This document shows positions 37,430 through 50,324 of a stretch of DNA of 64,000 nucleotides, piece after piece. The translations under genes and the position numbers were made by a program. The notes below the pieces were generated by a model. That model was given only the letters and a program-made list of their open reading frames with translations. It was not told where the DNA came from and made no database searches. Position 1 is the first letter of the stretch. Each line of letters opens with the position of its first letter. This DNA is from Mytilus edulis (lineage: Eukaryota): assembly GCF_963676685.1 (NCBI RefSeq), contig NC_092351.1, forward strand, positions 25,978,001-26,042,000, given 5' to 3'.

Positions 37430-40400
37430 CAATTCATTAATGCTTGTCATTTCGCTGTTAATAGGGACTCCGGCCTGAAGTATGTCCAAGCTGAGACAAC
37501 TATTATAATCTCAGGTCCTAAGTGAACAGAAATTTGGATGATTTTATGGTGAAAACAAACGAATGTCTAACAAAAGGGGGATACACCCTCTACTCCCCAG
37601 AATTCGAAACTGATCTTGGTAAATTTACCAATAAATAAAGTCCTAAAAGGCTCATAAATATTTGTTCCTTATATTACTGGCAAATGCATTCGACACCGAA
37701 ACAAACCCAGGCCCTCGTTCACCTAGGTGGCCTTGCGGAAGTTGTAGTAAGGCAGTGACATGGAAACATCATGCTGTCTGCTGCGACTCCTGTGAAACTT
37801 GGTACCACATCGATTGCCAAGGAATACCAAACCAAATATACAACATAATGAATAATAGTAATATAAGTTGGCACTGTATACAATGTGGTATGCCAAATTT
37901 TAGCTCAAGCTTCTTTAACTTTACAACCTTAGAAACATCAAATATATATGACAGCTTATATAAATTCACCAAGCAGTCTTAGAGATGTAGGAAGTCCAGG
38001 TGCACCAACAGCTGCATCATCTCCAATTCCACACAAACTTCCCTGTCATGAAAAAGCTTATACAACAACAAAAAAGAGCAAAATGCCATTAAATTCTAAA
38101 CATGAATTTTCAATCAATTAAAAACAAAAAACCGGACCTACTAGAAATTATTGATACTGTCAAACCAGATATCATACTAGGTACCGAAACATGGTTAGAA
38201 CCAAACACCTCTTCTTACGAGCACTTTCCATCAGATTTATATAATGTGTATCGCAATGACAGGGCACCAAGTACCAACAACCAAAGCTATGGGGGTGTAC
38301 TTATAGCAATTACAAAAGAATTCATAAGTTCAGAGGTAAAAGAACTAGAAACTGAATGTGAAGTAGTCTGGGCAGAAATCAATATCGCTTGCTGAAAAAC
38401 ATCTTAATATCATCCTACTACAGACCACCATCTGACACAGGATTGTCTCTAGAGCAACTCCATCAATCTCTAAATCGTATCAATAGTCAATCAAATGCAA
38501 CCATCTTTGTGGGGGTGATTTTAACTTGGGACATATTGATTGGTCAACATCAAGCACAATACCATGCAAACCTGACATACAACTTCACCAAAATCTCTAA
38601 GATATAATGAATGACACAAACCTACATCAAGTTGTCAATACACCAACAAGAAATGACCGTATACTAGATCTCATAATGATTAACAACCCAACATACATCA
38701 ACAAAGTAACCACACTACCACCAATAGGTTCAAGCGACCATGATATTGTTTATGCCGAAGCAGACATCTGGCTTAAGAAAATAAGAGAAACCCCACAAAA
38801 AGTATACAAGTATAACAAAGCCAACTGGGACGAAATTAAACTTGACATATGTATCATCTACAAAACAATCATTGACAACTATGATTCTCTTAACGCCAAT
38901 GAGCTATGGGAACTATTTAAAACCAAACTCATCAGCTCTGTCGAAAAACATATTCCATCAAAGATCCTACGAAACAAACACCGATTACCGTGGATATCTG
39001 ATAAATTTTAAAAGACGTCAAATTAACAAGAAAAACAAACTTTTCAAAAGGCAAAAAAAAACAGGGAATACACTGAGAAATATAAAAAAAGATGAAAGCT
39101 CAGGTACAAAAAGAACAAAGGAAGGCCTACTGGGAATATATTGAAAAACTCATATGTGATCTTCCCATCAATGAACCAGACATTCAAATACAAAATCAGA
39201 GCAAACCTAAAAAAAACTTTTTCAATACATCAAATCAATAAAAACTGAAGGATCGAAAAGCTCTTAAATAAGATCAACCCACATAAAGCCACCGGCCCAG
39301 ATAACATCAGTGGACGCTTACTGAAAGAAATGCAGACAGAAATAGCACCAATTCTATGCTTAATTTTTAACAAATCCTACAACACTGGTATTTCACCTAA
39401 CGACTGGAAACACGCTAGAGTCGCACCAGCATATAAAAAGGGGGATAAGCATAAACCGGTCACTTATAGACCTATCTCATTAACTTGTATTTGCTGCAAG
39501 TTAATGGAACACATAGTAACATCACATATTATGAAACATCTCATATCAAATAACATCTTGTACAACCTTCAACATGGCTTTCGGCGCTCTCGATCTTGTG
39601 AGACACAACTTCTCTCCTTCATCCAAGAACTTCAATCCACAAACAACTCAAATACTCAAACAGACCTTGTAATAATGGACTTTGCGAAGGTCTTTGATAA
39701 AGTACCGCATCGTCACTTACTATACAAATTACAATATTTTGGTATTAATGGAAACACTTTAAACTGGATCTCTGCATTTCTCTCCGATCGAACACAGACA
39801 GTTGTTCTGGGTGGAAGATCATCAAGCACAGTCCCAGTCACCTCTGGGGTTCCACAAGGTACTGTCTTAGGTCCGTCTTATTCTTAGCGTATATCAACGA
39901 CCTTCCAGACATCCTTACACATAGCAAACTAAGATTATTTGCTGATGACAGTATCATATACATGCCAGTTAAATCCCAGAGTGACTGCCTAAAATTGCAA
40001 GCTGACCTTGACGCAGCTGCAAAATGGGAAGAGGACTGGATAATGGCCTTCCACCCAGACAAGTGTAATGTTCTCTCTGTCACAACTAAACGTCAACCTC
40101 TACAACATAATAACACTCTTCACAATCATACTTTAGAAACTGTTACATCTGCTAAATACTTAGGCATCACATTACAATCAAACCTTAAATGGGACAAACA
40201 CATAGATGACAATATATCGAAAGCCAACAAAACTCTCGGCTTCCTTCGAAGAAACCTGAAAACAGCAAATCAAAACATCCAGAGCCAGGCATACCAAGCA
40301 CTTGTCCGTCCCAAACTCGAATACTCTTGCTCAGTTTGGGACCCCCACACTTCAGAATCTATCTCGAAGATAGAGATGATCCAAAGGAGAGCTTCTCGGT

Positions 40401-40774
40401 ATGCCTGCAACAGGTATCATAATACTAGCAGTGTATCAAACATGCTGAACACACTAAACTGGCCCATTTTAACACAACGCAGACTGCGTGCACGCCTGGT
40501 TATGATGTACAAGATCACACATCCTCTTGTTGCTATACTATCTAGCACAATTCTCATCCCATCAGACTCAAGAACCAGAAAACATCATTTTCACACCTTC
40601 AGACACATTTATACATCAAAAGACTCGTACAGATTTTCATTTTTTCCCATATACAATAACTCAATGGAATCTTTTACCAACCGCAGTAGTAAATGCACAG
40701 ACAGTCGACTCTTTCAAAGATCAGCTTACATATGCTGTTCTCTTCACTATCTTTTAAAAATCTTCATTTATTCA
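37430..40774 (+). mobile_element. Decayed CR1/L2-group non-LTR retrotransposon (2A-like motif, PHD finger, APE endonuclease, RT)
   Basis: Frameshifted ORFs: PHD C4HC3; NFQSIKNK/GTETWL/GGV/SDHD endonuclease; YRPISLT/QHGFR/DFAKVFDKV/GVPQGTVLGP/LFADD RT; SFFPYTITQWN C-terminus; 5' boundary approximate. Confidence 0.93.
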
Positions 40775-40994
40775 NNNNNNNNNNNNNNNNNNNNNNNNNN
40801 NNNNNNNNNNNNNNNNNNNNNNNNNNNNNNNNNNNNNNNNNNNNNNNNNNNNNNNNNNNNNNNNNNNNNNNNNNNNNNNNNNNNNNNNNNNNNNNNNNNN
40901 NNNNNNNNNNNNNNNNNNNNNNNNNNNNNNNNNNNNNNNNNNNNNNNNNNNNNNNNNNNNNNNNNNNNNNNNNNNNNNNNNNNNNNNNNNNNNN
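40775..40994. other. Assembly gap (220 N)
   Basis: Run of n. Confidence 1.
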
Positions 40995-41310
40995 TGAAAA
41001 TCACACCAAATGTATTAGGAAAAATTGTAAGTTATATTGGCCAGCAAAGATTGGACAAAAAGAACTGATGACCACCAAAACAAATAAAAGGAGATTAGAT
41101 GGCTAGGGCACACTTTAAGAAAAGACAAGAATAACATCACCAAAAACATCAGAACGTAGACGAACAAGAGAAAGACCAAAACGACAATTGACATTGAAAT
41201 TAAAAGCATAGGAAAGACCTTACTGAGTTCCGAATGGAAAGGATTGCAATGGAGATAACTGGTATATATCATCCTTATATTCCAACCGACACGAAGAGGA
41301 TTAGTTATAG
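40995..41310 (+). mobile_element. 3' fragment of an RTE-clade LINE
   Basis: Degenerate KCIRK..YWP..I...EL / WLGHTLRK, and a tail acgaagaggattagttatag resembling the 46780-46812 tail. Confidence 0.7.
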
Positions 41311-41759
41311 TTATTTAAAAGGAAAAATAAACATAAAATCCAGTAATTCGAACACTTACACATTAAAATTTTTAGATTTTAGATAGCGGCCGAGTGTGTA
41401 AAATATAGGATTAAGATTCTAACTATAAGTAGAGGAAACACACAAAACTACAACCAATATTTCTATTCGGAAAAAAAAGTAGACTTTACCATCTAGAAGA
41501 GGAGGTGGTCAGTGCCAAAGTTCAAGTCGACTAAGCGCATTCATGCACCAACGTTGTAAAATTACCTAATTGGTTTCTTCAACAGTGAGATTTATAACTT
41601 TTAAGAGGGACAGAGGATACCAAGGGGTCGATAGTATATCAGAAGAAACACGAAGAAAAGACCGACAAAATACAACACAGAAAACTGAGGACTGATCAAA
41701 CGAACCATAATAAAAGCCGTGATTGATTTCAGGTGTCGCAGAAAGAAAATCAAACACTA

Positions 41760-42400
41760 GCTGCTCTCCATTGTGGCACCCGTCTTACTCAGTGATGTTT
41801 CAATCGAAGAAAACAGGACGTAATTGTGGTTACGACAATTGGAACATATACGCGGTCATCTGTGATACAGACATTCATTAATAGGCAAACATATCATGAT
41901 GACATCCGTAGATATTTTAATGGGACCACTCCAATTTCACCATAAGATCCCTTTCCCTTTGGTCAACTGCTTCTTTGTAAGCAACAGCCTTTTGTGGCTA
42001 CGACAATTGGAACACAGCTGTGGTCATCTGCATGTGATACAGAAATTATTTAATAGGCAAACATATTATGATGACATCCGTAGATATTTTGAAGGGATGA
42101 CACCAACTTTACCATAAGAAACCCTTGTGTCAAGTTCTTCTTTGCATGCAGCAGCCCTTTATCAAGAAAATCATAAAAAGAAACACAACATAAGGAATAT
42201 CTTATGAATTTGCTGCATGATATATGCTTAACATGCAGGCGATGCTGGAATGTTGCCACTATAAATAGAAATGAAAAGTTCACCACTTTAATCATCTCTT
42301 TTGTCGTAAAGTTTAGTTCTCAACCCTCAATGTCAATTTCTTAGACAAAATATATGAAGGACACTTACCGGTATCTGTGGTATCATTTGTTTCAAGTTTG
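41760..42400 (-). mobile_element. Penelope-like element RT C-terminal fragment with a local ~168-bp tandem duplication
   Basis: LETNDTTDTGKCPSY, FIRYSLCCVSFYDFLDKGLL...QGFLMVKLVSSLQNIYGCHH; unit ttgtggytacgacaattggaaca at ~41824 and ~41992. Confidence 0.8.
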
Positions 42401-42464
42401 ATGGATGCATTCGTTAACATTGCATTATCTAGTGATGGGACAGCATTATTCCCCGAGGATGTCA

Positions 42465-42775
42465 ACATCCCAGTAGTCAGCACTTCTGTGTTGACATGAA
42501 TTATCATTGATATGGCCATAGTTATCAGTTATACTGTTTACAAAAAATTTAAGTTAATTTTTTAAATACTAAGGCTTTTTTACATCAGGAAAAGATTACC
42601 TTAGCTGCATGTATTTGGCCATAATATTTAGGAATTTGGTCCTCAATGCTCTTCAAATTCGTACTTTATTTAGCCTTTTTTACTATTTTTTTTACTGGTG
42701 AGTCTTTTGTAGACGAAACGCGCGTCTGGCACAAGTTCAAAATTTCAAACCTGGTATATAATATGATGAATTTAT
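42465..42775 (+). repeat. Hammerhead-bearing interspersed repeat (mutated core CUGGUGA)
   Basis: Highly similar to 50165-50405; ctggtgagtcttttgtagacgaaacgcgcgtctggc at 42695-42730. Confidence 0.75.
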
Positions 42776-43523
42776 TCACAATCTACTGAATACATATAAT
42801 ATTATATGTAACTGGTAAAATGGCTTCTAATTTAAAATCTTACCCGATTGCACAAAATAACGAATTGATGTCTTGATGATAAATAAGACAGTTTTGAGCA
42901 GACATATACCAAATGCAGTAGCCACAATTATTTTCAATGCTAATATAATTAATGAATGCAATCTCAAAATAAAAGATAACAGTGAACCATATATACATCT
43001 GCCTTTAAAAAAAGAGAAAACTATCTAACGACTTTTACGTTTAGTTACTTCTTCATTTGTTAAAAATTTACATTCATTCACCGTTTGATTATATTAAAAC
43101 AGGACGATCTCGTGGATTTTAGTAAAACGAAATCATTGCGATATTTTGTTAAAAGTCTATATTCAATGCCTTTGTATAGCGAAATAATAGACCAACAGAC
43201 TAGTAGTCCTATACCTTCAGATCAATTTGACCCAATAAACGTGAATTAGCTCAAATTTCATTGGTATGTTTTTAATGATATTTTTACATTTAGAAAGAGC
43301 CTGACATCTAAATTTCAGACGGTATATTTGGAGCCAATTTAAGCCACACAAAATGTTATTTATAATAGAGGATAACCTGCATGCAATGAAAGTTGTCATT
43401 GATGTACGTCAAGATGTGACATATGAAAATAACACATATTCACTCAAATATTCGTTGGGGGTGTACGGGGTCAACAAGATATATAGGACAGGCTAACTCA
43501 ATTGTAGGTGAAAAGAAAGTCGA

Positions 43524-43641
43524 GTGTGTAAATCTTTCCTGGCAGTACAAAGCCTCTACACTTTCCAAGACTTCTACTGTGCCTCCTCGCGACAGCACAC
43601 GGTTAACTAGGTTATATTATCCTAGGCATCATCTGTAGAGG
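43524..43641 (+). ncRNA. Candidate HDV-like self-cleaving ribozyme at the RTE 5' end
   Basis: P1 GUGUGU(A)/(A)GCACAC, P2 CUUCUAC/GUAGAGG, P3 GCC/GAC around loop UCCUCGC, GG after P1, P4 CUAGG/CCUAG, then C43627, in HDV order. Confidence 0.6.
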
Positions 43642-46600
43642 ATTTCGGAGCAGCAAGGGCACCATAGATTCAGTGTATAGACCCACTGGCGTGTATATAT
43701 ACCCTAGCACTCATTAGCCTTGCACCAGCTATGGGTCAAATTGTGATTGGATTTTTGAATCAAAGGCTATGGAAGTTAATCCAGACATAAACTCCGGTTG
43801 ATGGAACTCGTCAGCAACAGCAATCGTCTAAGGGATGGCAACCCTTACAGAAAAGCTGCCGGTCCTCCGGGCCCAGGAGGTTAAGCGTAGAGTTAATCAC
43901 CCTGCCTTGGAAAAAAATCTTGATTACAGAAACGACTACAATAGGCACTACTTTTTCTCGTCACAGACTGGAGAAAGAACATGCTTTAACCGAAAACAGC
44001 AGATGACGCGAAGGCCGATGGAGCTACAAGCAAACTAACTACTAGAATAGGCACATGGAATGTAAGAACACTTTACCAAAGTGGTAAATGTGCACAAGTA
44101 ACAACAGAGATGGATAGATACAAGATTGAAATTATAGGACTGAGCGAAGTAAGATGGAACACATTAGGTATGAAAAATTTGAATACAGCCCACACAATCA
44201 TATATTCTGGAATCACCAAACAAAATGACCCACATGAAAAGGAAGTTGGATTTCTTATAACAAAAAGATCTAAGACAGCCTTGCTGGAGTGGAATCCCAT
44301 CTCACCAAGAATTATCACAGCACGCTTCAACTCACGTTTCCAAAAAAAAACACCCTGATACAAATATACGCCCCTACTAATAGTGCAGAAGACTGTAAAA
44401 AGGAAGACTTCTACCATTCATTACAAACAACCATAGAAAAGTGCCAAACAGAGACCTGTTGGTACTCATGTGTGACCTAAATGCCAAGGTTGGATCGGAA
44501 AGAAAGGGATGGGAGTGAGAGAAACTGGTCCTATTGGGATAGGAAAAATGAATGAAAACGGCGAACTATTTGCAGACTTCTGTGCTACCAACAACCTTGT
44601 TATAGGAGGAACACTCTTCAAACAAAAGAATTGCCATAAGGTAACCTGGGTTAACCCAGAAGGAAATGCAGAAAACCAAATAGACCACATGACCATTTCC
44701 TAGAGATGGAGGTCTTCACTGCAAGATGTAAGGGCAAAAAAGAGGAGCAGATGCAGCATCAGACCATCATCTATTTATAGGGTCAATAAAGATGAAACTT
44801 TTAGCCCAAAAAAGAACAGTTGTCAAAAGAAGAAAGTTTAACGTTGGTAAGCTTTAAATACCAAACATAAGAGAAGAATTCCAAATATCTCTTTAAAACC
44901 GATTTTCAGCTATAAGTGACCTGCAAATAGAGAACAACAATATTAATGACACATGGGAGCAGGCAAAAAATGTAATCATAGAAACATGCGAGGAAACATT
45001 AGGATACATGCAGTATAAACGCAAAAAATGGATGTCAGATGATACATGGGTTAAGGTTGAAGAAAGAGAAAAAAAAAGGTAAATGTCACCTTAAGACAAC
45101 AGAAAAGACAAACACAAGATCTTTATAGAGAGAAAGACAAAGAAGTAAAGAAGAACTGTAAACATGACAAAAGAAACTATGTTGAACAACTAGCGCAAGA
45201 AGCAGAAAATGCCTGTAGCAAAGGAGACATAAAATCTCTCTACAACACAACTCGACAACTTAATGGTAGAAGATCCCACTCAAATGCTACAGTTAAAGAT
45301 AAAAGGCAATGTGATTACACAAATTGAAGAACAATTAAAACGATGGAAAGAACATTTTGAAGAAGTGCTAAACAGACCCCCTGCAACAAACCCACCTAAC
45401 ATCGAAGGGAGACAGGTCCTAAATATCAAGACAGGAAATATAACCAAAACAAAAGTAAATGCTGCAATAAAACAACTGAATAATGAAAAAGCAGCCGGGA
45501 TCGACAATATACCCCCTGAAGCTATTAAGGCAATGGATAACATCTGTTTTGATAAACTTCACCAACTACTTAACAAAATATGGAATGACGAACATATACC
45601 TGAAGACTGGCGTAAAGAAATACTCGTTAAACTACAAAAGAAAGGCGACAAATCCATCTGTAGCAACTGAAGAGGCATTATTTTGCTTTCCATTCCTAGC
45701 AAAGTCCAAAGTCACATCATCCTACAAAGATTAAAGAAAGAAGTTGATAAATTGCTGAGAGATGAACAGGCCGGTTTCAGACAAGATAGATCATGCATTG
45801 ACCAAATTGCCACATTAAGAATCATCATTGAGCAAACCATTGAATGGCAGACATCCCTATACTTAACATATGTGGATTTTGAAAGGGCTTTTGATAGTAT
45901 ATAACCATGAAGTACATTATTAGGCATTATGGAATACATGTCAAAATAATATCCGTCATCCAACAGCTCTATGACGGTTTTACTTGTCAAGTGAGCCATG
46001 CAGAGACCCTGACAAATCCATTTCCTGTAACAACTGATGTGAGGCAAGGATGGTTCTCTCCCCTCTCTTATTTCTGATGGGTATATACTGGGTGAATAAG
46101 TAAGACAAGTAAGACTGTACATAAATGCAAATAGGACAAAATCTATGAGAGTAAACGCGAACCACCTTAACAAAACCAAAATGAGAGATGCCGAAATTGA
46201 AGATGTCCGAGAATTTACATATCTTGGAAGTGTAATCAGTACACCAGAAGGGACAGATAAACATCCAATCTAGAAAATGAAAAGCACAACAAGCCTTTGC
46301 AATCCTTAAACCAGTCTGGAGGAGCATAGCACTCAGAAAAAATACCAAAATCAGGATCTTCAACTGCAATGTAAAATCTATACTTCTCTTTGGTTCAGAA
46401 ACTTGGAAATTAACAGCTGCGTCTACCAAAACAATACAAGTTTTCATGAACAAGTGTCTTAGAAACATCATAGGAATCAAGTCGCCTAACACCATTAGCA
46501 ACAAAGAACTATGGAAAAGGACTAAACAGGAACCAATAGAAAGAACAATTACGACACGTAGATGGAAATGGCTTGAACACACGTTACGTAAAACAACACT

Positions 46601-46812
46601 AATGTAACTAGACAGGCACTAGATTGGAATCCGCAGGGTCATCGTAAAAGAGGGCGACCAAAATCCACCTGGCGCAGAGATCTTACATCTAATCTACAGA
46701 AATTTGGGAAAACATGGACAGAAGCAAAGAAAATAGTCAAAGACAGGGAAAGATTGAAAGCTACTGTTGTCGCCCTATGTCCTCCATGGGACGAAGTGGA
46801 TTGTCAAGTAAG
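43524..46812 (+). mobile_element. Decayed near-full-length RTE-clade LINE
   Basis: RIGTWNVRTL, IIGLSEVRW, YAPTN, DLNAKVG, NENGE, NQIDH, SDHH endonuclease; KKGD..CSN.RGI.LL, EQAGFR, DFERAFDSI RT; RRWKWLEHTLRK, WNPQGHRKRGRPK C-terminus; many stops and frameshifts. Confidence 0.93.
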
Positions 46813-46872
46813 CCAAAGATAGGTAAATATGGCATATAAACTCATCATAGATACTAGGATCAAAATTGTGTA

Positions 46873-46916
46873 CACCAGACGTGCGTTTCGTCTACAAAAA
46901 ATACTCATCAGTTACC
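46873..46916 (-). ncRNA. Degenerate hammerhead ribozyme copy
   Basis: Minus strand ggtaaCTGATGAgtattttttgtagacGAAAcgcacGTCtggtg; stems I and II weakened. Confidence 0.55.
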
Positions 46917-47229
46917 ATTGTAAAACAAGTATGGTAAGTGTTCAAAGGTACAAACAGTTTAATTCTGATTTGTATCCTCGAAACCACAGCCTCAATCAAA
47001 TCCTTTTCTACCTTTTGTGAATATTTCTCTTGTGGTTTACTGTTGTATTGCTGTAAATTAATCAGAGGAGGGTTTCGTTGAGAGGTTTACATGTTCTTTA
47101 TTTTTATTATATCATTTATTTATGTATTTCTCTGTTTACGTGTTCTAGCGTTTATTTGTACTGTATTCCTGTCACGTAATGTTTTCTTTTTATTGGATTT
47201 GTTTTCGCTTTATCGATTAATGACTTTTG

Positions 47230-47760
47230 TACAGCATAGTACTACTGTTGTCCATTTTCTGGCATAATACTTGCCTGAATCCCTTAGTATCATTCAAAGT
47301 TGTGATTCCAGTTTATAGATATTACACGACCCGCAGTATTTTGACCCTCGGACAACCGACACCACGTATTTTACATAGAAGATCCAAGTGTTGTTTATTA
47401 CATCCTGGCCACCATTTATAACTCGACCAACCTGGATTATTTATGAGGTGGGAACTTGCACAGGTGCAATTATTAATCAGAGGTTTAGACTTAAAATCGC
47501 CGATGAGATTCCGCACCACGTGTTTGTAAAATTTTATTTGCAATAAGGGTGGTATATGGAAAAGCAAAGGAACATACAATGTCTACAACAAAAACAGTTA
47601 AATTCATGTTTATCAAAAGGACACGCTATGAAATTTCTATTTGAAAACATGAGTTGCATAAAAAGCACGGAATTCGTAACCTATAGAGACACACCTCATA
47701 CAAAATGCCCGCTTAGACATTCATGCAATATAATTTGTATTTCTCCAGAAACAGTAAGTA
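47230..47760 (-). mobile_element. Penelope-like element fragment
   Basis: DFKSKP..CTCASS..I.NP segment; paralogous to 52090-52620. Confidence 0.6.
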
Positions 47761-48859
47761 ATATTTTATGTATAGCTCGGTCACTGATTACATATTGATT
47801 TTCTTATGGGTGCACGAGTACAATAAAAGTATATTTAGAGTTGAAAATTCACCGAAGTCATTACACATCAAACTCGAAAGGATTCATGGAATTGATAAAA
47901 AGAAATAATATGACAACTCAGATAGAGAAGAACATCCTGCAAATCTTCAGAAACCGTAGATTTTGCCATTGTTGTCCGTCTCTTAGCGAAGGTTAAAATA
48001 GACAAGGTGTCAAGAAGAAGGAATTGAGACACCAAGACTGAATCACGTTTTTATGAGATCCTCCGTGGAGATCTAGAGAAAGATGACACTTTGTCTTTAG
48101 CTTCCAGGAGCCGTGAGAGAGTTTTTCTAGATGTCCAGGAATCTCTTTTAATGATGGCAGTGTTGGTATGAGTTACATCATAGATGAAGTTGCTACTTAC
48201 TCACAAGAAGTTTAAGCATCTGTAAAGCACTCTCACCGAATCTCTCAGATCAGGATTTGCTATTCAAAGGATGAACTCATAACTTCTGTATGTGCCCATC
48301 CAAAACAAAAACATAAAAGTTATTCGAAAACTGTTACAAATCAAACATTTAAGAAAGTCGCCGAATGGGTAAAAACTCAAGCTAAAGAATCGTACTGTAA
48401 GTTAGGGAACACACAACACTAAAACCAATAGTTCTTTTTGTAGACTAGTAAGACAGTAGACTGGAACCATCTAGGAAAGGAAGTGGTCAATGCCGAAAGT
48501 CAAATAAGCGCATTCAACCAACGAATAAAAAAAGTCAAAATTGGTTTCTTCTACGTACTTCAATATACAGACACATTTGTATTTTTAAAAAGGGTTAATG
48601 AAATCAGAGATACTAGTATCTAATGCAAGCTTATCATGACTATATGTCTCAAACGCAGAACTTTCACGTCAGTCTCTACGTCTCTAATATAGTTAAATCA
48701 TTTTAAATGATCATAAATGATGGGGGCGTAATTTAAAACCTCTTTCGGAATACTATCATTAATATTAACTTAATCAATATAGATATAATTAAGTTAAGTT
48801 CATTTCTTTGCATCTTCAAGACTTGTAATGGCTAAACTTTGTGAGATTTATAAATATAA

Positions 48860-49870
48860 ATAAAGGCAACAGTAGTATACCGCTGTTCAAAACCCATAAA
48901 TCCACGGACAAAAAACAAAATCGGGGTAACAAACCAAAACCGAGGGAAACGCATCAAATACAAGAGGAGAACAACGACACAACACTAAAATGTAACATAC
49001 ACAGAAACGGACTAAGCACTAGACAAAATCCTATGAGAACAACAAATATAACATCAAAGTCAAATACATGAATTTGAGATAGATAAGTACCGTGACACGT
49101 CTCAATGTGAATTTACACTCAAAAATAAGAGAAAACAAAAAAAAGTAAAATCACAAAAAACGACACAACGGAAACAGAACGTTAAAATGTAACACCCACA
49201 GAAACGAACTATTATATAACAATGGCCATATTCCTGACTTTGTACAGGACATTTTTAAAGGAGAAAAATGGTGGGTTAAACCTGGCCATGTGAAATATAA
49301 CATTAAAATGACAAAACAACATTACAGGACTACAATATAAATAAATAGGTGAACGCAATTGACAAAGAAATACACGAATAATAGCTAACAAAAGGCAACA
49401 ATTTTAAAATTTTAATACGCCAGAAGTTGCATTTTGTCCACACAAGACTTACTAGTGACGCCCAGATACAAAAGTTTGAAAGCCGAAACAAGTACAAAGT
49501 TGAACAGCATCGAGGACCAACAGTTCAAAAAAGTTGTGCCAAAAACGGCCAGGGTTTTCTGTTAGGTACCAGAATATTCCTATTATATAGAATAATTTAT
49601 ACTTTTGCAAAAAGTAAATTTTATAAAATGACTATAAAAAAGATATATGATAAAACTGAAGTATTAACTAACTACAGGAAACAACCGAAATACATTACAT
49701 AACCAGACAAAATGCATCACAAAATATAGACACATCCGAATAAGTTAAAACCTCAACGCCAAGTGACGTCATATTTGAAATTGTAAAAAAATGACAAAAA
49801 AATGACGTCACATTTGAATTTGTAAAACAAATTATCAAAAATGAAAAATGACGTCACATTTGAATGAATA
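48860..49870 (-). repeat. Repeat tract containing a diverged copy of the hammerhead-bearing family
   Basis: 49416-49463 reads gggcgtcactagtaagtcttgtgtggacaaaatgcaacttctggcgt on minus (decayed core); flanks match 50165-50405; three TGACGTCA motifs at ~49763-49855. Confidence 0.55.
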
Positions 49871-50324
49871 ACGGAACAGAAGATACCAGGCGGACATTTA
49901 AAAATCTTAAATCACGGGAAAACAACGAAAAGACAGACAAAGTCCACAGACATCACACAGTAAAACTGGTGTGTGAGAAGGGAAACCAAATACTCCTTCC
50001 CTAGTAGCATCCGTCTTGTTGTCTAATGACAAATAAACATTCTTTGATACGTTTTTCTCATTATTTACCAGTCACGGAAAGGAAAAGTGGACGGTAATGT
50101 AGCCACAATAATGAGAACATACCTGCGATCATCTGTGAAACATACATATTTATATTTATAAATTAATTGTTTACAAAACTTTTGAATTTTTGAAATACTA
50201 AGGCTTTCCTACATCACGAACAGATTACTTTGACTGTATTTGGCAAAACTTTTAGGAATTTTGGTTCTCATTGCTCTGCAACTTCGTACTTTATTTGGCC
50301 TTTTTAACTTTTTTGGATTCGAGA

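What the first reader, a model, noticed from the sequence alone, without database searches (positions are those of the whole stretch)
43524..43641. HDV-like double-pseudoknot ribozyme at the 5' end of an RTE retrotransposon
Seen, in HDV order: G43524-UGUGU pairing with GCACAC (43595-43600, P1); CUUCUAC (43571-77) with GUAGAGG (43635-41, P2); GCC-UCCUCGC-GAC (43581-93, P3/L3, loop identical to antigenomic HDV L3); GG (43601-02) to pair with the loop CC (P1.1); hairpin CUAGG/CCUAG (P4); candidate catalytic C43627. It lies ~480 nt upstream of the RTE ORF. Established: HDV-like ribozymes process the 5' ends of R2, L1Tc and some RTE elements. Caveat: P3 has one mismatch, and J4/2 and the top of P2 are imperfect, consistent with a decayed copy. 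Inference: this RTE family is excised from host read-through transcripts by self-cleavage 5' of G43524.
Basis: partly seen in the sequence, partly recalled or inferred. Interest (0 to 1): 0.8.

Follow-up and report, generated by a model that had tools for sequence, protein, structure and literature searches.

The report
Truncated relic of RTE ribozyme

Summary
P2, P3/L3, the P1 3' strand, the P1.1 guanines, P4 and C43627 are real, conserved parts of a family-wide HDV-like double pseudoknot.

The P1 5' strand and the cut site at G43524 are wrong:
- The window copy (43491 to about 46816) is a decayed RTE copy that begins at family position 79.
- Full-length copies run 78 nt further upstream and start at a G whose first 7 nt (GUGUGCU) pair with AGCACAC, which is window 43594-43600.
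- On 43 distinct full-length 5' regions, this P1 is 94% paired and 4 of 7 pairs show compensatory changes. P2 (9 bp) and P4 also covary.
It lies in the apical loop of a hairpin within a structured J1/2 domain of about 173 nt.

Points against a canonical ribozyme:
- The middle pair of P3 is C·A in 33 of 43.
- J4/2 is 6-7 nt.
- No Rfam HDV-type model reaches its threshold.
- Self-cleavage is untested, and the RNA reads were uninformative.

The genome holds at least 150 copies, one with an intact ORF and a target-site duplication. Two other first-reader notes in this genome (s1-832437, s1-832517) describe the same long-J1/2 ribozyme on other DNA.

Verdict: new member of a known kind, and a dead relic at this locus.

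The parts
43491..46816 (+). 5'-truncated, decayed copy of an RTE-type non-LTR retrotransposon (family positions 79 to about 3.58 kb)
   Evidence: collinear with a full-length copy, L003 element positions 79-2206 matching 43491-45592 at 89.5% over 2134 nt; none of the 42 non-self matches starts upstream of window 43488, and 12 start at 43491; matches to 46300-47300 end at query 503-521, mostly 513-517, which is about 46816; the first 78 family nt are absent from the whole window.
43491..43570 (+). Remnant (3' half) of the J1/2 peripheral domain. It contains hairpin 43496-43501/43504-43509, hairpin 43515-43520/43532-43538, and 43541-43546, the 3' strand of a helix whose 5' strand is cut by the truncation (only 43491-93 remains).
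   Evidence: Column-to-window map. Helices supported on the family alignment: 40 pairs, 92.1% of cells paired, 21 pairs changed on both sides.
43521..43531 (+). It is not the ribozyme's P1.
   Evidence: 0 compensatory changes, and pair 127-207 is unpaired in 28 of 41; flanked by the covarying stem at columns 110-116/132-141.
43571..43579 (+). P2 5' strand (CUUCUACUG). U43578 is A in the family.
   Evidence: helix 181-189/243-251 is 96.6% paired, with 4 of 9 pairs changed on both sides. Found independently by RNAalifold. Mapped.
43581..43593 (+). P3 (GCC/GAC, with a C·A in the middle) enclosing L3, UCCUCGC at 43584-90
   Evidence: outer pairs are kept in 42/43 and 40/43. The middle pair is unpaired in 33/43, C-G in 8, A-U in 1 and U-A in 1. 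L3 positions are conserved in 38-42 of 43.
43594..43600 (+). P1 3' strand (AGCACAC), orphaned here because its partner, family nt 1-7, is missing
   Evidence: columns 1-7/204-210 are 94.3% paired, with 4 of 7 pairs changed on both sides (for example GUGUGCU/AGCACAC against GUGUAUU/AAUACAC). Mapped.
43601..43602 (+). GG that pairs with the L3 CC (43585-86) to form P1.1
   Evidence: 96.5% paired. G in 42 of 43 at each position.
43607..43625 (+). P4 hairpin (43607-13 with 43619-25)
   Evidence: 95.2% paired, with 4 of 7 pairs changed on both sides..
43626..43632 (+). J4/2 (GCAUCAU) with the candidate catalytic C43627
   Evidence: G236 in 43/43 and C237 in 41/43. The remaining 4-5 nt vary.
43633..43641 (+). 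P2 3' strand (CUGUAGAGG)
43990..46819 (+). Broken ORF remnants (AP endonuclease, reverse transcriptase, DUF6451) spread over all three frames
   Evidence: One search lists stop-free pieces in three frames. RVT_1 at 34.2 bits on 45671-45901, and DUF6451 at 54 bits on 46281-46604.

Best explanation
The window contains a dead, 5'-truncated copy of an RTE-type retrotransposon from what is most likely a Mytilus mussel genome.

In full-length copies the first roughly 230 nt fold into a large HDV-like nested double pseudoknot with these parts:
- P1: element nt 1-7 paired with a strand about 190 nt downstream.
- J1/2: a multi-helix peripheral domain of about 173 nt.
- P2: 9 bp.
- P3: 3 bp around an L3 loop whose CC pairs with a GG to form P1.1.
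- P4.
- J4/2: carries an invariant G-C.

The inferred mechanism is as follows. The element is transcribed as part of a longer host or repeat transcript. The ribozyme cuts just 5' of G1. The resulting RNA, which starts exactly at the element's first base, is copied back into the genome.

The window copy begins at family position 79, probably because reverse transcription was incomplete. It therefore keeps P2, P3/L3, the P1 3' strand, P1.1, P4 and J4/2, but lacks the P1 5' strand and the cut site.

Shown here: the truncation, the family 5' boundary, the conserved and covarying fold, and the domain content. Inferred: self-cleavage, co-transcription and any role in translation.
For: Truncation:
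- Searches place the start of homology at 43491, which is family position 79.
- Searches show the first 78 nt are absent from the window.

Family 5' end at G1:
- Upstream flanks are unrelated among copies.
- 35 of 40 matches to a full-length 5' region reach its position 1-3.
- G occupies column 1 in 35 of 43 distinct rows.
- For copy L017, RNA reads from uninterrupted paralogues of the flanking repeat diverge exactly at the element's first base. Their continuation matches the sequence after the element's 3' end, giving a 9-10-bp target-site duplication.

Fold:
- One search tested 57 pairs. 92.1% of cells are paired against 84.1% in shuffles (0 of 500 shuffles reach the observed value) and 31-45% when partners are slid.
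- 34 pairs change on both sides.
- P1 is 94.3% paired, P2 96.6%, P1.1 96.5% and P4 95.2%.
- RNAalifold found P2 and P4 unaided.
- The catalytic C is kept in 41/43, the preceding G in 43/43, and the L3 positions in 38-42 of 43.
- 28 of 43 distinct copies keep the whole core by loose criteria.
- One clade gives a sub-threshold hit to Rfam drz-agam-1 that aligns P2, P3/L3 and P4 (23.4 bits, E 0.72).

Element type and abundance:
- L017 has one open frame of 1046 codons containing Exo_endo_phos, RVT_1 and DUF6451.
- The closest proteins are Mytilus 'craniofacial development protein 2-like'.
- All 150 scored candidates in the genome match the model.

Precedent: large HDV-like ribozymes with structured J1/2 domains (PMC4908430, passages read), and HDV-like ribozymes at RTE 5' ends (PMC6765202 and PMC3774820, passages read).
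Against: - No self-cleavage has been shown.
- No Rfam HDV-type model hits the window at E<=10. None reaches its gathering score on five full-length copies. One of the five gives 23.4 bits against a threshold of 37.
- The middle pair of P3 is a C·A mismatch in 33 of 43 distinct copies.
- J4/2 is 6-7 nt.
- One nucleotide, an invariant U, lies between P2 and P3.
- Single-sequence folding energies are no better than shuffles: z = -0.45 for a full-length copy and +0.98 for the window fragment.
- RNA reads from four runs gave almost no coverage of the ribozyme region and no pile-up of 5' ends at G1.
- The compared copies are related, so the covariation counts overstate the number of independent events. 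I can name only about two independent double changes in P1.
- A uniform 5' end could also come from an internal promoter.
Confidence: 0.8

Rival explanations
1. The loop GUGUGU (43524-29) serves as P1 with GCACAC, and the window RNA self-cleaves 5' of G43524, either as a cryptic site or as a second natural site of the family.
For: In the window and in its own subfamily the six pairs are contiguous. Across the family, 5 of the 6 pairs stay pairable, with 86.6% of cells paired. All other core elements are present.
Against: No compensatory change occurs, and the middle pair is broken in 28 of 41. The strand sits in the loop of a covarying hairpin. Homology runs through the site, and no match starts at G43524. 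One low-identity match starts one base before it. P2 in the window has a U·U that the family lacks. The minimum-free-energy fold of the fragment does not form this pairing.
Confidence: 0.06
2. The conserved 5' fold is a structured untranslated region that binds the element's protein or helps translation, and it does not self-cleave. The uniform 5' end at G1 comes from an internal promoter that starts transcription there.
For: - The C·A mismatch in P3 is present in 33/43.
- J4/2 is long.
- No Rfam match reaches threshold.
- No RNA 5' ends were seen.
- Published work ascribes protein binding and translation roles to such 5' regions (PMC6765202, passages read).
Against: The topology is specifically the HDV-type double pseudoknot. 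P1 uses the very first 7 nt and covaries. The G-C of J4/2 and the L3/P1.1 nucleotides are nearly invariant. The C·A variant is carried by an intact, duplication-flanked copy that has a 99.6% identical twin, so it has not stopped transposition.
Confidence: 0.12
3. The resemblance is a chance arrangement of short complementary strings in AT-rich DNA.
For: The single-sequence folding energy of the window fragment is no better than shuffles.
Against: The stretch is part of a repeat family with at least 150 copies. It scores 143.5 bits against the family model. Its helices covary.
Confidence: 0.01

Closest known systems
HDV-like self-cleaving ribozymes at the 5' ends of non-LTR retrotransposons (RTE, R4, L1Tc, Drosophila R2). 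Source: Ruminski et al. 2011, known only as cited in PMC6765202 and PMC3774820; the paper itself is not held.
   Same: The ribozyme sits at the extreme 5' end of an element that appears to lack its own upstream promoter. The first P1 nucleotide is the first element nucleotide. It has the nested double pseudoknot with P1, P2, P3, P1.1 and P4, a G at +1 paired with C or U, and a conserved cytosine in J4/2.
   Different: J1/2 is a multi-helix domain of about 173 nt. The middle pair of P3 is C·A in most copies. J4/2 is 6-7 nt. One U lies between P2 and P3. No Rfam model reaches threshold. Cleavage is untested. The window copy lacks P1.
Large HDV-like ribozymes with a structured J1/2 peripheral domain, such as drz-Agam-2-1 (PMC4908430, abstract and passages read)
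   Same: A folded domain is inserted between P1 and P2. In that paper a helix in J1/2 brings P1 and P2 together and speeds cleavage.
   Different: Here the domain has at least six covarying helices rather than one P1.2 helix. No kinetic data exist. The size of the mosquito domain was not read from the paper.
Rfam RF01787 drz-agam-1 ribozyme
   Same: In one clade (locus L020) the model aligns to P2, P3/L3 (near-identical string) and P4.
   Different: The score is 23.4 bits against a gathering score of 37. The other four copies tested and the window give no hit.
Twister-variant ribozymes at the 5' ends of RTE-type and other non-LTR elements (PMC8501958, abstract only; PMC7761336, passage)
   Same: The proposed job is the same: 5' processing of a retrotransposon RNA out of a longer transcript.
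   Different: It is a different ribozyme class and fold.

Membership tests
HDV-like self-cleaving ribozyme (the family's full-length copies) | Nested double pseudoknot made of P1, P2, P3, P1.1 and P4 | tested here: met
   P1 is 94.3% paired (4/7 pairs compensatory), P2 96.6% (4/9), P1.1 96.5% and P4 95.2% (4/7). P3 is weaker (see its own row). Shuffle control: 0 of 500 reach the observed value. Slid controls: 31-45% paired.
HDV-like self-cleaving ribozyme (the family's full-length copies) | Cleavage site immediately 5' of the first P1 nucleotide (here also the element's 5' end), with G at +1 | tested here: met
   Only the position was tested, not the chemistry. Flanks diverge right before G1. 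G occupies column 1 in 35 of 43. The empty site and target-site duplication at L017 are shown.
HDV-like self-cleaving ribozyme (the family's full-length copies) | Conserved catalytic cytosine in J4/2 | tested here: met
   C in 41/43, with the preceding G in 43/43. J4/2 is 6-7 nt; that this is longer than usual is my recollection of the family, not a tested fact.
HDV-like self-cleaving ribozyme (the family's full-length copies) | Three-base-pair P3 closing an L3 loop with two C's for P1.1 | tested here: inconclusive
   the outer pairs are kept, but the middle pair is C·A in 33/43, C-G in 8, A-U in 1 and U-A in 1. L3 is conserved.
HDV-like self-cleaving ribozyme (the family's full-length copies) | Score at or above the gathering threshold of a curated Rfam HDV-type model | tested here: not met
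   1 of 5 copies hits drz-agam-1 at 23.4 bits against 37, and the others give nothing. A large J1/2 insertion is expected to lower such scores.
HDV-like self-cleaving ribozyme (the family's full-length copies) | Site-specific self-scission | not testable with these tools
   The RNA reads gave near-zero depth over the ribozyme and no 5' end pile-up.
   0 compensatory changes, and the middle pair is unpaired in 28/41.
   homology starts at 43491 in the window, and the family extends 78 nt further upstream.
RTE-clade non-LTR retrotransposon | Single ORF with an N-terminal AP endonuclease followed by reverse transcriptase, and no ORF1 (feature list recalled) | tested here: met
   Copy L017 has one open frame of 1046 codons and no other frame of 150 codons or more. 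Exo_endo_phos and Exo_endo_phos_2 hit. RVT_1 (117.8 bits) and DUF6451 hit.
RTE-clade non-LTR retrotransposon | Short element of about 3.2-3.6 kb with a short-repeat 3' tail rather than poly(A) (recalled) | tested here: met
   One copy is 3579 nt. L017 is about 3.6 kb and ends in a GGTGA-type short repeat before the target-site duplication.
RTE-clade non-LTR retrotransposon | Reverse transcriptase groups with RTE in a phylogeny | not tested
   No reference sequences were at hand. As a hint only, the closest proteins carry the name 'craniofacial development protein 2-like', a label I recall being used for RTE/BovB-derived endonuclease domains.

The most novel reading that the evidence does not exclude
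The nearly invariant 11-nt hairpin loop in J1/2 (window 43521-43531) mimics the P1 5' strand and can pair with the P1 3' strand at 5 of 6 positions across the family. It could be a built-in competitor that gates folding into the active ribozyme, acting as a conformational switch on self-cleavage. In 5'-truncated copies like this one, it could stand in for P1 and give cryptic cleavage at G43524. A linked oddity is the conserved C·A in P3, which is carried by lineages that kept transposing and might make cleavage sensitive to protonation.
Probability: 0.08. Interest if true: 0.55.

Novelty: new member of a known kind. Interest (0 to 1): 0.33.

Why it matters
HDV-like ribozymes are already known to trim the 5' ends of RTE and other non-LTR elements, so the principle is not new.

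What this adds is a well-populated family, apparently in mussels, with at least 150 copies. It has an unusually large J1/2 domain supported by covariation and a tolerated C·A in P3. At least one copy is intact and flanked by a target-site duplication, which makes the family a convenient natural series for testing how peripheral domains and P3 mismatches tune HDV-type catalysis.

For annotation, the practical lesson concerns 5'-truncated copies. They keep a convincing-looking ribozyme core and can mislead motif hunters into calling a false P1 and cut site. The family 5' end has to be established first.

Tried and rejected
- **Rfam scans of the window.** The scans of 40000-50000 and 43480-43700 at E<=10 gave no HDV-type hit. 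On five full-length loci there was only one sub-threshold drz-agam-1 hit.

- **Folding energies.** Single-sequence energies gave no support.

- **RNA evidence.** The look-up of sequencing runs listed no holder recorded as RNA. Four raw-read RNA runs of the same species label were laid on L017:1115-2414. Depth over the ribozyme was about 0, with no begin pile-up at G1, so cleavage could be neither supported nor refuted. The reads did fix the insertion boundary.

- **Model placement at 43461-69.** The covariance model's global alignment put model positions 1-9 on window 43461-69. I rejected this as forced, because a profile of the first 83 alignment columns finds nothing there even at E<=1000 and BLAST finds nothing.

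- **Alternative J1/2 helices.** RNAalifold's 48-50/171-173 conflicts with 47-52/74-79. I kept the latter, which has 4 of 6 compensatory pairs. Helices 40-42/179-181 and 43-46/170-173 are mostly invariant and remain open.

- **Alternative P2 partner.** CCUCUAC at 43553-59 as the partner of the P2 3' strand was rejected by eye on the alignment: it stays unchanged in the clade whose P2 3' strand changed.

- **Extra model hits.** Four low-scoring hits fetched were decayed copies. They were not added to the alignment, so all counts rest on the 47 rows of A1 (43 distinct).

- **How A1 was chosen.** The rows are the 47 of 63 unique loci whose match reached query position 5 or less. The 16 dropped rows were 5'-truncated or partial, and the window copy was among them.

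- **Papers.** Ruminski et al. 2011 (PMC3308841) is not held. What I say of it comes from citing passages. Its supplements and those of the other papers were not seen and may list RTE ribozymes from molluscs. A search for Mytilus + HDV + ribozyme + retrotransposon found 2 papers, both on hammerhead retrozymes.

- **Phylogeny.** No RT phylogeny was made.

Full report
**1. The observation.**
- GUGUGU at 43524-29 and GCACAC at 43595-43600
- CUUCUAC at 43571-77 and GUAGAGG at 43635-41
- GCC-UCCUCGC-GAC at 43581-93, with a C·A in the middle of P3
- GG at 43601-02
- CUAGG/CCUAG at 43607-11 and 43621-25
- C43627

Rfam found no HDV-type family at E<=10, either in 40000-50000 or in 43480-43700.

**2. 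The window copy and its 5' end.**
I searched the window's own genome with 43300-44100. This gave 43 matches, from 40 of 180 candidates scored.
- None of the 42 non-self matches starts upstream of window 43488.
- Twelve start at 43491.
- None starts at G43524. One 70%-identity match starts one base before it.

Aligning 26 copies with their upstream DNA showed that other copies continue about 78 nt further upstream than the window copy. Their flanks become unrelated just before a G that opens the string GUGUGCU.

The window copy is collinear with a full-length copy from element position 79: L003 79-2206 matches 43491-45592 at 89.5% over 2134 nt. The missing 78 nt are nowhere in the 64-kb window. 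Homology ends near 46816. The ORF is broken into stop-free pieces in all three frames, and two of the eight pieces tested still hit RVT_1 and DUF6451.

The window therefore holds a decayed, 5'-truncated copy.

**3. The family fold.**
I aligned 47 full-length 5' regions, 43 of them distinct (A1). These were the 47 of 63 unique loci whose match reached the first five positions.

RNAalifold, which cannot draw pseudoknots, found P2 and P4 on its own, plus several helices between them and the 5' end.

I then counted the full double pseudoknot together with seven of the upstream helices:
- 57 pairs, with 92.1% of cells paired, against 84.1% in shuffles (0 of 500 reach the observed value) and 31-45% with partners slid by 1-3 columns.
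- 34 pairs have changes on both sides.

| Helix | Columns | % cells paired | Pairs changed on both sides |
|---|---|---|---|
| P1 | 1-7 with 204-210 | 94.3 | 4 of 7 |
| P2 | 181-189 with 243-251 | 96.6 | 4 of 9 |
| P1.1 | 195-196 with 211-212 | 96.5 | 1 of 2 |
| P4 | 217-223 with 229-235 | 95.2 | 4 of 7 |

Examples of compensatory change:
- P1: GUGUGCU/AGCACAC against GUGUAUU/AAUACAC, and a U-A to C-G change in locus L073.
- P2: CUUCUACAG/CUGUAGAGG against CUCUUGCAA/UUGCAAGGG.

The first pair of P1 is G-C in 18 rows and G·U in 17.

P3 is the weak point. Its outer pairs hold, but the middle pair is C·A in 33 of 43, C-G in 8, A-U in 1 and U-A in 1.

The J4/2 cytosine is kept in 41/43, the preceding G in 43/43, and the L3 positions in 38-42 of 43. 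By loose criteria, 28 of 43 distinct copies keep the whole core.

**4.
Paired with columns 205-210, it shows no change on both sides, and its middle pair is unpaired in 28 of 41. The other five pairs remain pairable (86.6% of cells), which I take up in the novel case.

The strand lies in an 11-nt, nearly invariant loop closed by a covarying stem. That stem is one of at least six helices of a J1/2 domain of about 173 nt. On 40 pairs, 92.1% of cells are paired and 21 pairs change on both sides.

Mapping the columns onto the window gives these coordinates:

| Element | Window coordinates |
|---|---|
| P2 | 43571-79 with 43633-41 (window-specific U·U at 43578/43634) |
| P3 | 43581-83 with 43591-93 |
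| L3 | 43584-90 |
| P1 3' strand | 43594-43600 |
| P1.1 G's | 43601-02 |
| P4 | 43607-13 with 43619-25 |
| J4/2 | 43626-32 |

**5. The element and its activity.**
Copy L017 has one open frame of 1046 codons. For that reading I joined two adjacent fetched stretches in a script. The frame contains Exo_endo_phos domains, RVT_1 at 117.8 bits and DUF6451.

The copy ends in a short GGTGA-type repeat and is flanked by a 9-10-bp duplication of the target. Its 5' region is 99.6% identical to that of a second copy, L019. It carries the C·A in P3 with every other core helix intact. The mismatch has therefore not stopped transposition.

The closest proteins are 83-99% identical entries from Mytilus edulis and M. 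trossulus named 'craniofacial development protein 2-like'. Homologues of about 870-910 aa combine the same three Pfam families. I infer from this that the genome is a Mytilus. The RTE clade fits by architecture and size, but I made no phylogeny.

A covariance model built from A1 finds one hit in the window, at 143.5 bits. It matches all 150 scored candidates in the genome at E<=1e-23.

**6. RNA evidence.**
Four raw-read RNA runs were laid on L017:1115-2414. Depth over the ribozyme (1423-1642) was about zero, and there was no pile-up of starts at G1. Cleavage is therefore untested.

The upstream flank proved to be another expressed repeat. Reads from its uninterrupted paralogues go loose exactly at the element's first base (37-123 reads per run), and their continuation equals the DNA after the element's 3' end. 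This fixes the insertion boundary to within one base.

In one run, reads cover only 1643-1990, all with the first mate on the + strand. Coverage begins right where the ribozyme ends. I cannot explain this.

**7. What is known.**
- HDV-like ribozymes process R2, L1Tc, baggins and RTE elements. The cut coincides with the element's 5' end in R4, L1 and RTE (passages read in PMC6765202 and PMC3774820).
- Large HDV-like ribozymes have structured J1/2 domains that bring P1 and P2 together (PMC4908430, abstract and passages).
- RTE-type elements can also carry twister variants (PMC7761336, passage; PMC8501958, abstract).
- The primary paper on RTE ribozymes is not held.
- A search for Mytilus with HDV, ribozyme and retrotransposon found only two hammerhead-retrozyme papers.
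- Two other first-reader notes in this genome describe an HDV-like ribozyme with a long J1/2 at an RTE 5' end. I saw them only after reaching the same reading.

**8. Verdict.**
This copy is a truncated relic that cannot cut at the family's site. At family level this is a new member of a known kind. Its points of interest are the very large covarying J1/2 domain, the conserved P1-like loop and the tolerated C·A in P3. Self-cleavage remains to be shown.

Noticed in passing
window 42689-42732 (+) and 46870-46915 (-): Two sub-threshold matches to the type I hammerhead ribozyme model (18.6 and 17.5 bits against a threshold of 34). The second keeps the conserved boxes and lies about 55 nt beyond the RTE copy's 3' end.
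   Followed up: no
loci L043-L059 (e.g. G000:C13:12869833, C13:16576935, C7:1050171): Eleven or twelve near-identical full-length copies share at least 1.5 kb of upstream DNA (85-97% identical). This DNA is made of AT-rich tandem repeats and ends in a T run directly before G1. A ribozyme-cut RNA could not carry this flank, so these copies were spread at the DNA level or inside a larger unit.
   Followed up: partly
L017:1115-1414 (flank of the intact copy): The flank is another repeat that is well expressed in all four RNA runs, with depth of about 60-260 across 1115-1290 and about 12-75 across 1291-1414. Reads are mostly 90-95% identical, so they come from paralogues.
   Followed up: no
L017:1643-1990: In run X22 only, reads with the first mate on the + strand cover the element from just after the ribozyme's last pair, at depth 7-18. 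No reads cover the ribozyme itself. This could be a diverged or truncated expressed copy, or loss of the structured region in library making.
   Followed up: no
window 43461-43469: GUGUACGGG, 22 nt upstream of the truncation point, resembles the family's first nine bases at 7 of 9 positions, and the covariance model's forced global alignment picked it up. A profile search finds no real similarity there, so I treat it as chance.
   Followed up: yes
loci L067 and L069 (G000:C1:61699843 and C1:61609721): Two decayed copies about 90 kb apart share their upstream flank, which suggests a local segmental duplication.
   Followed up: no
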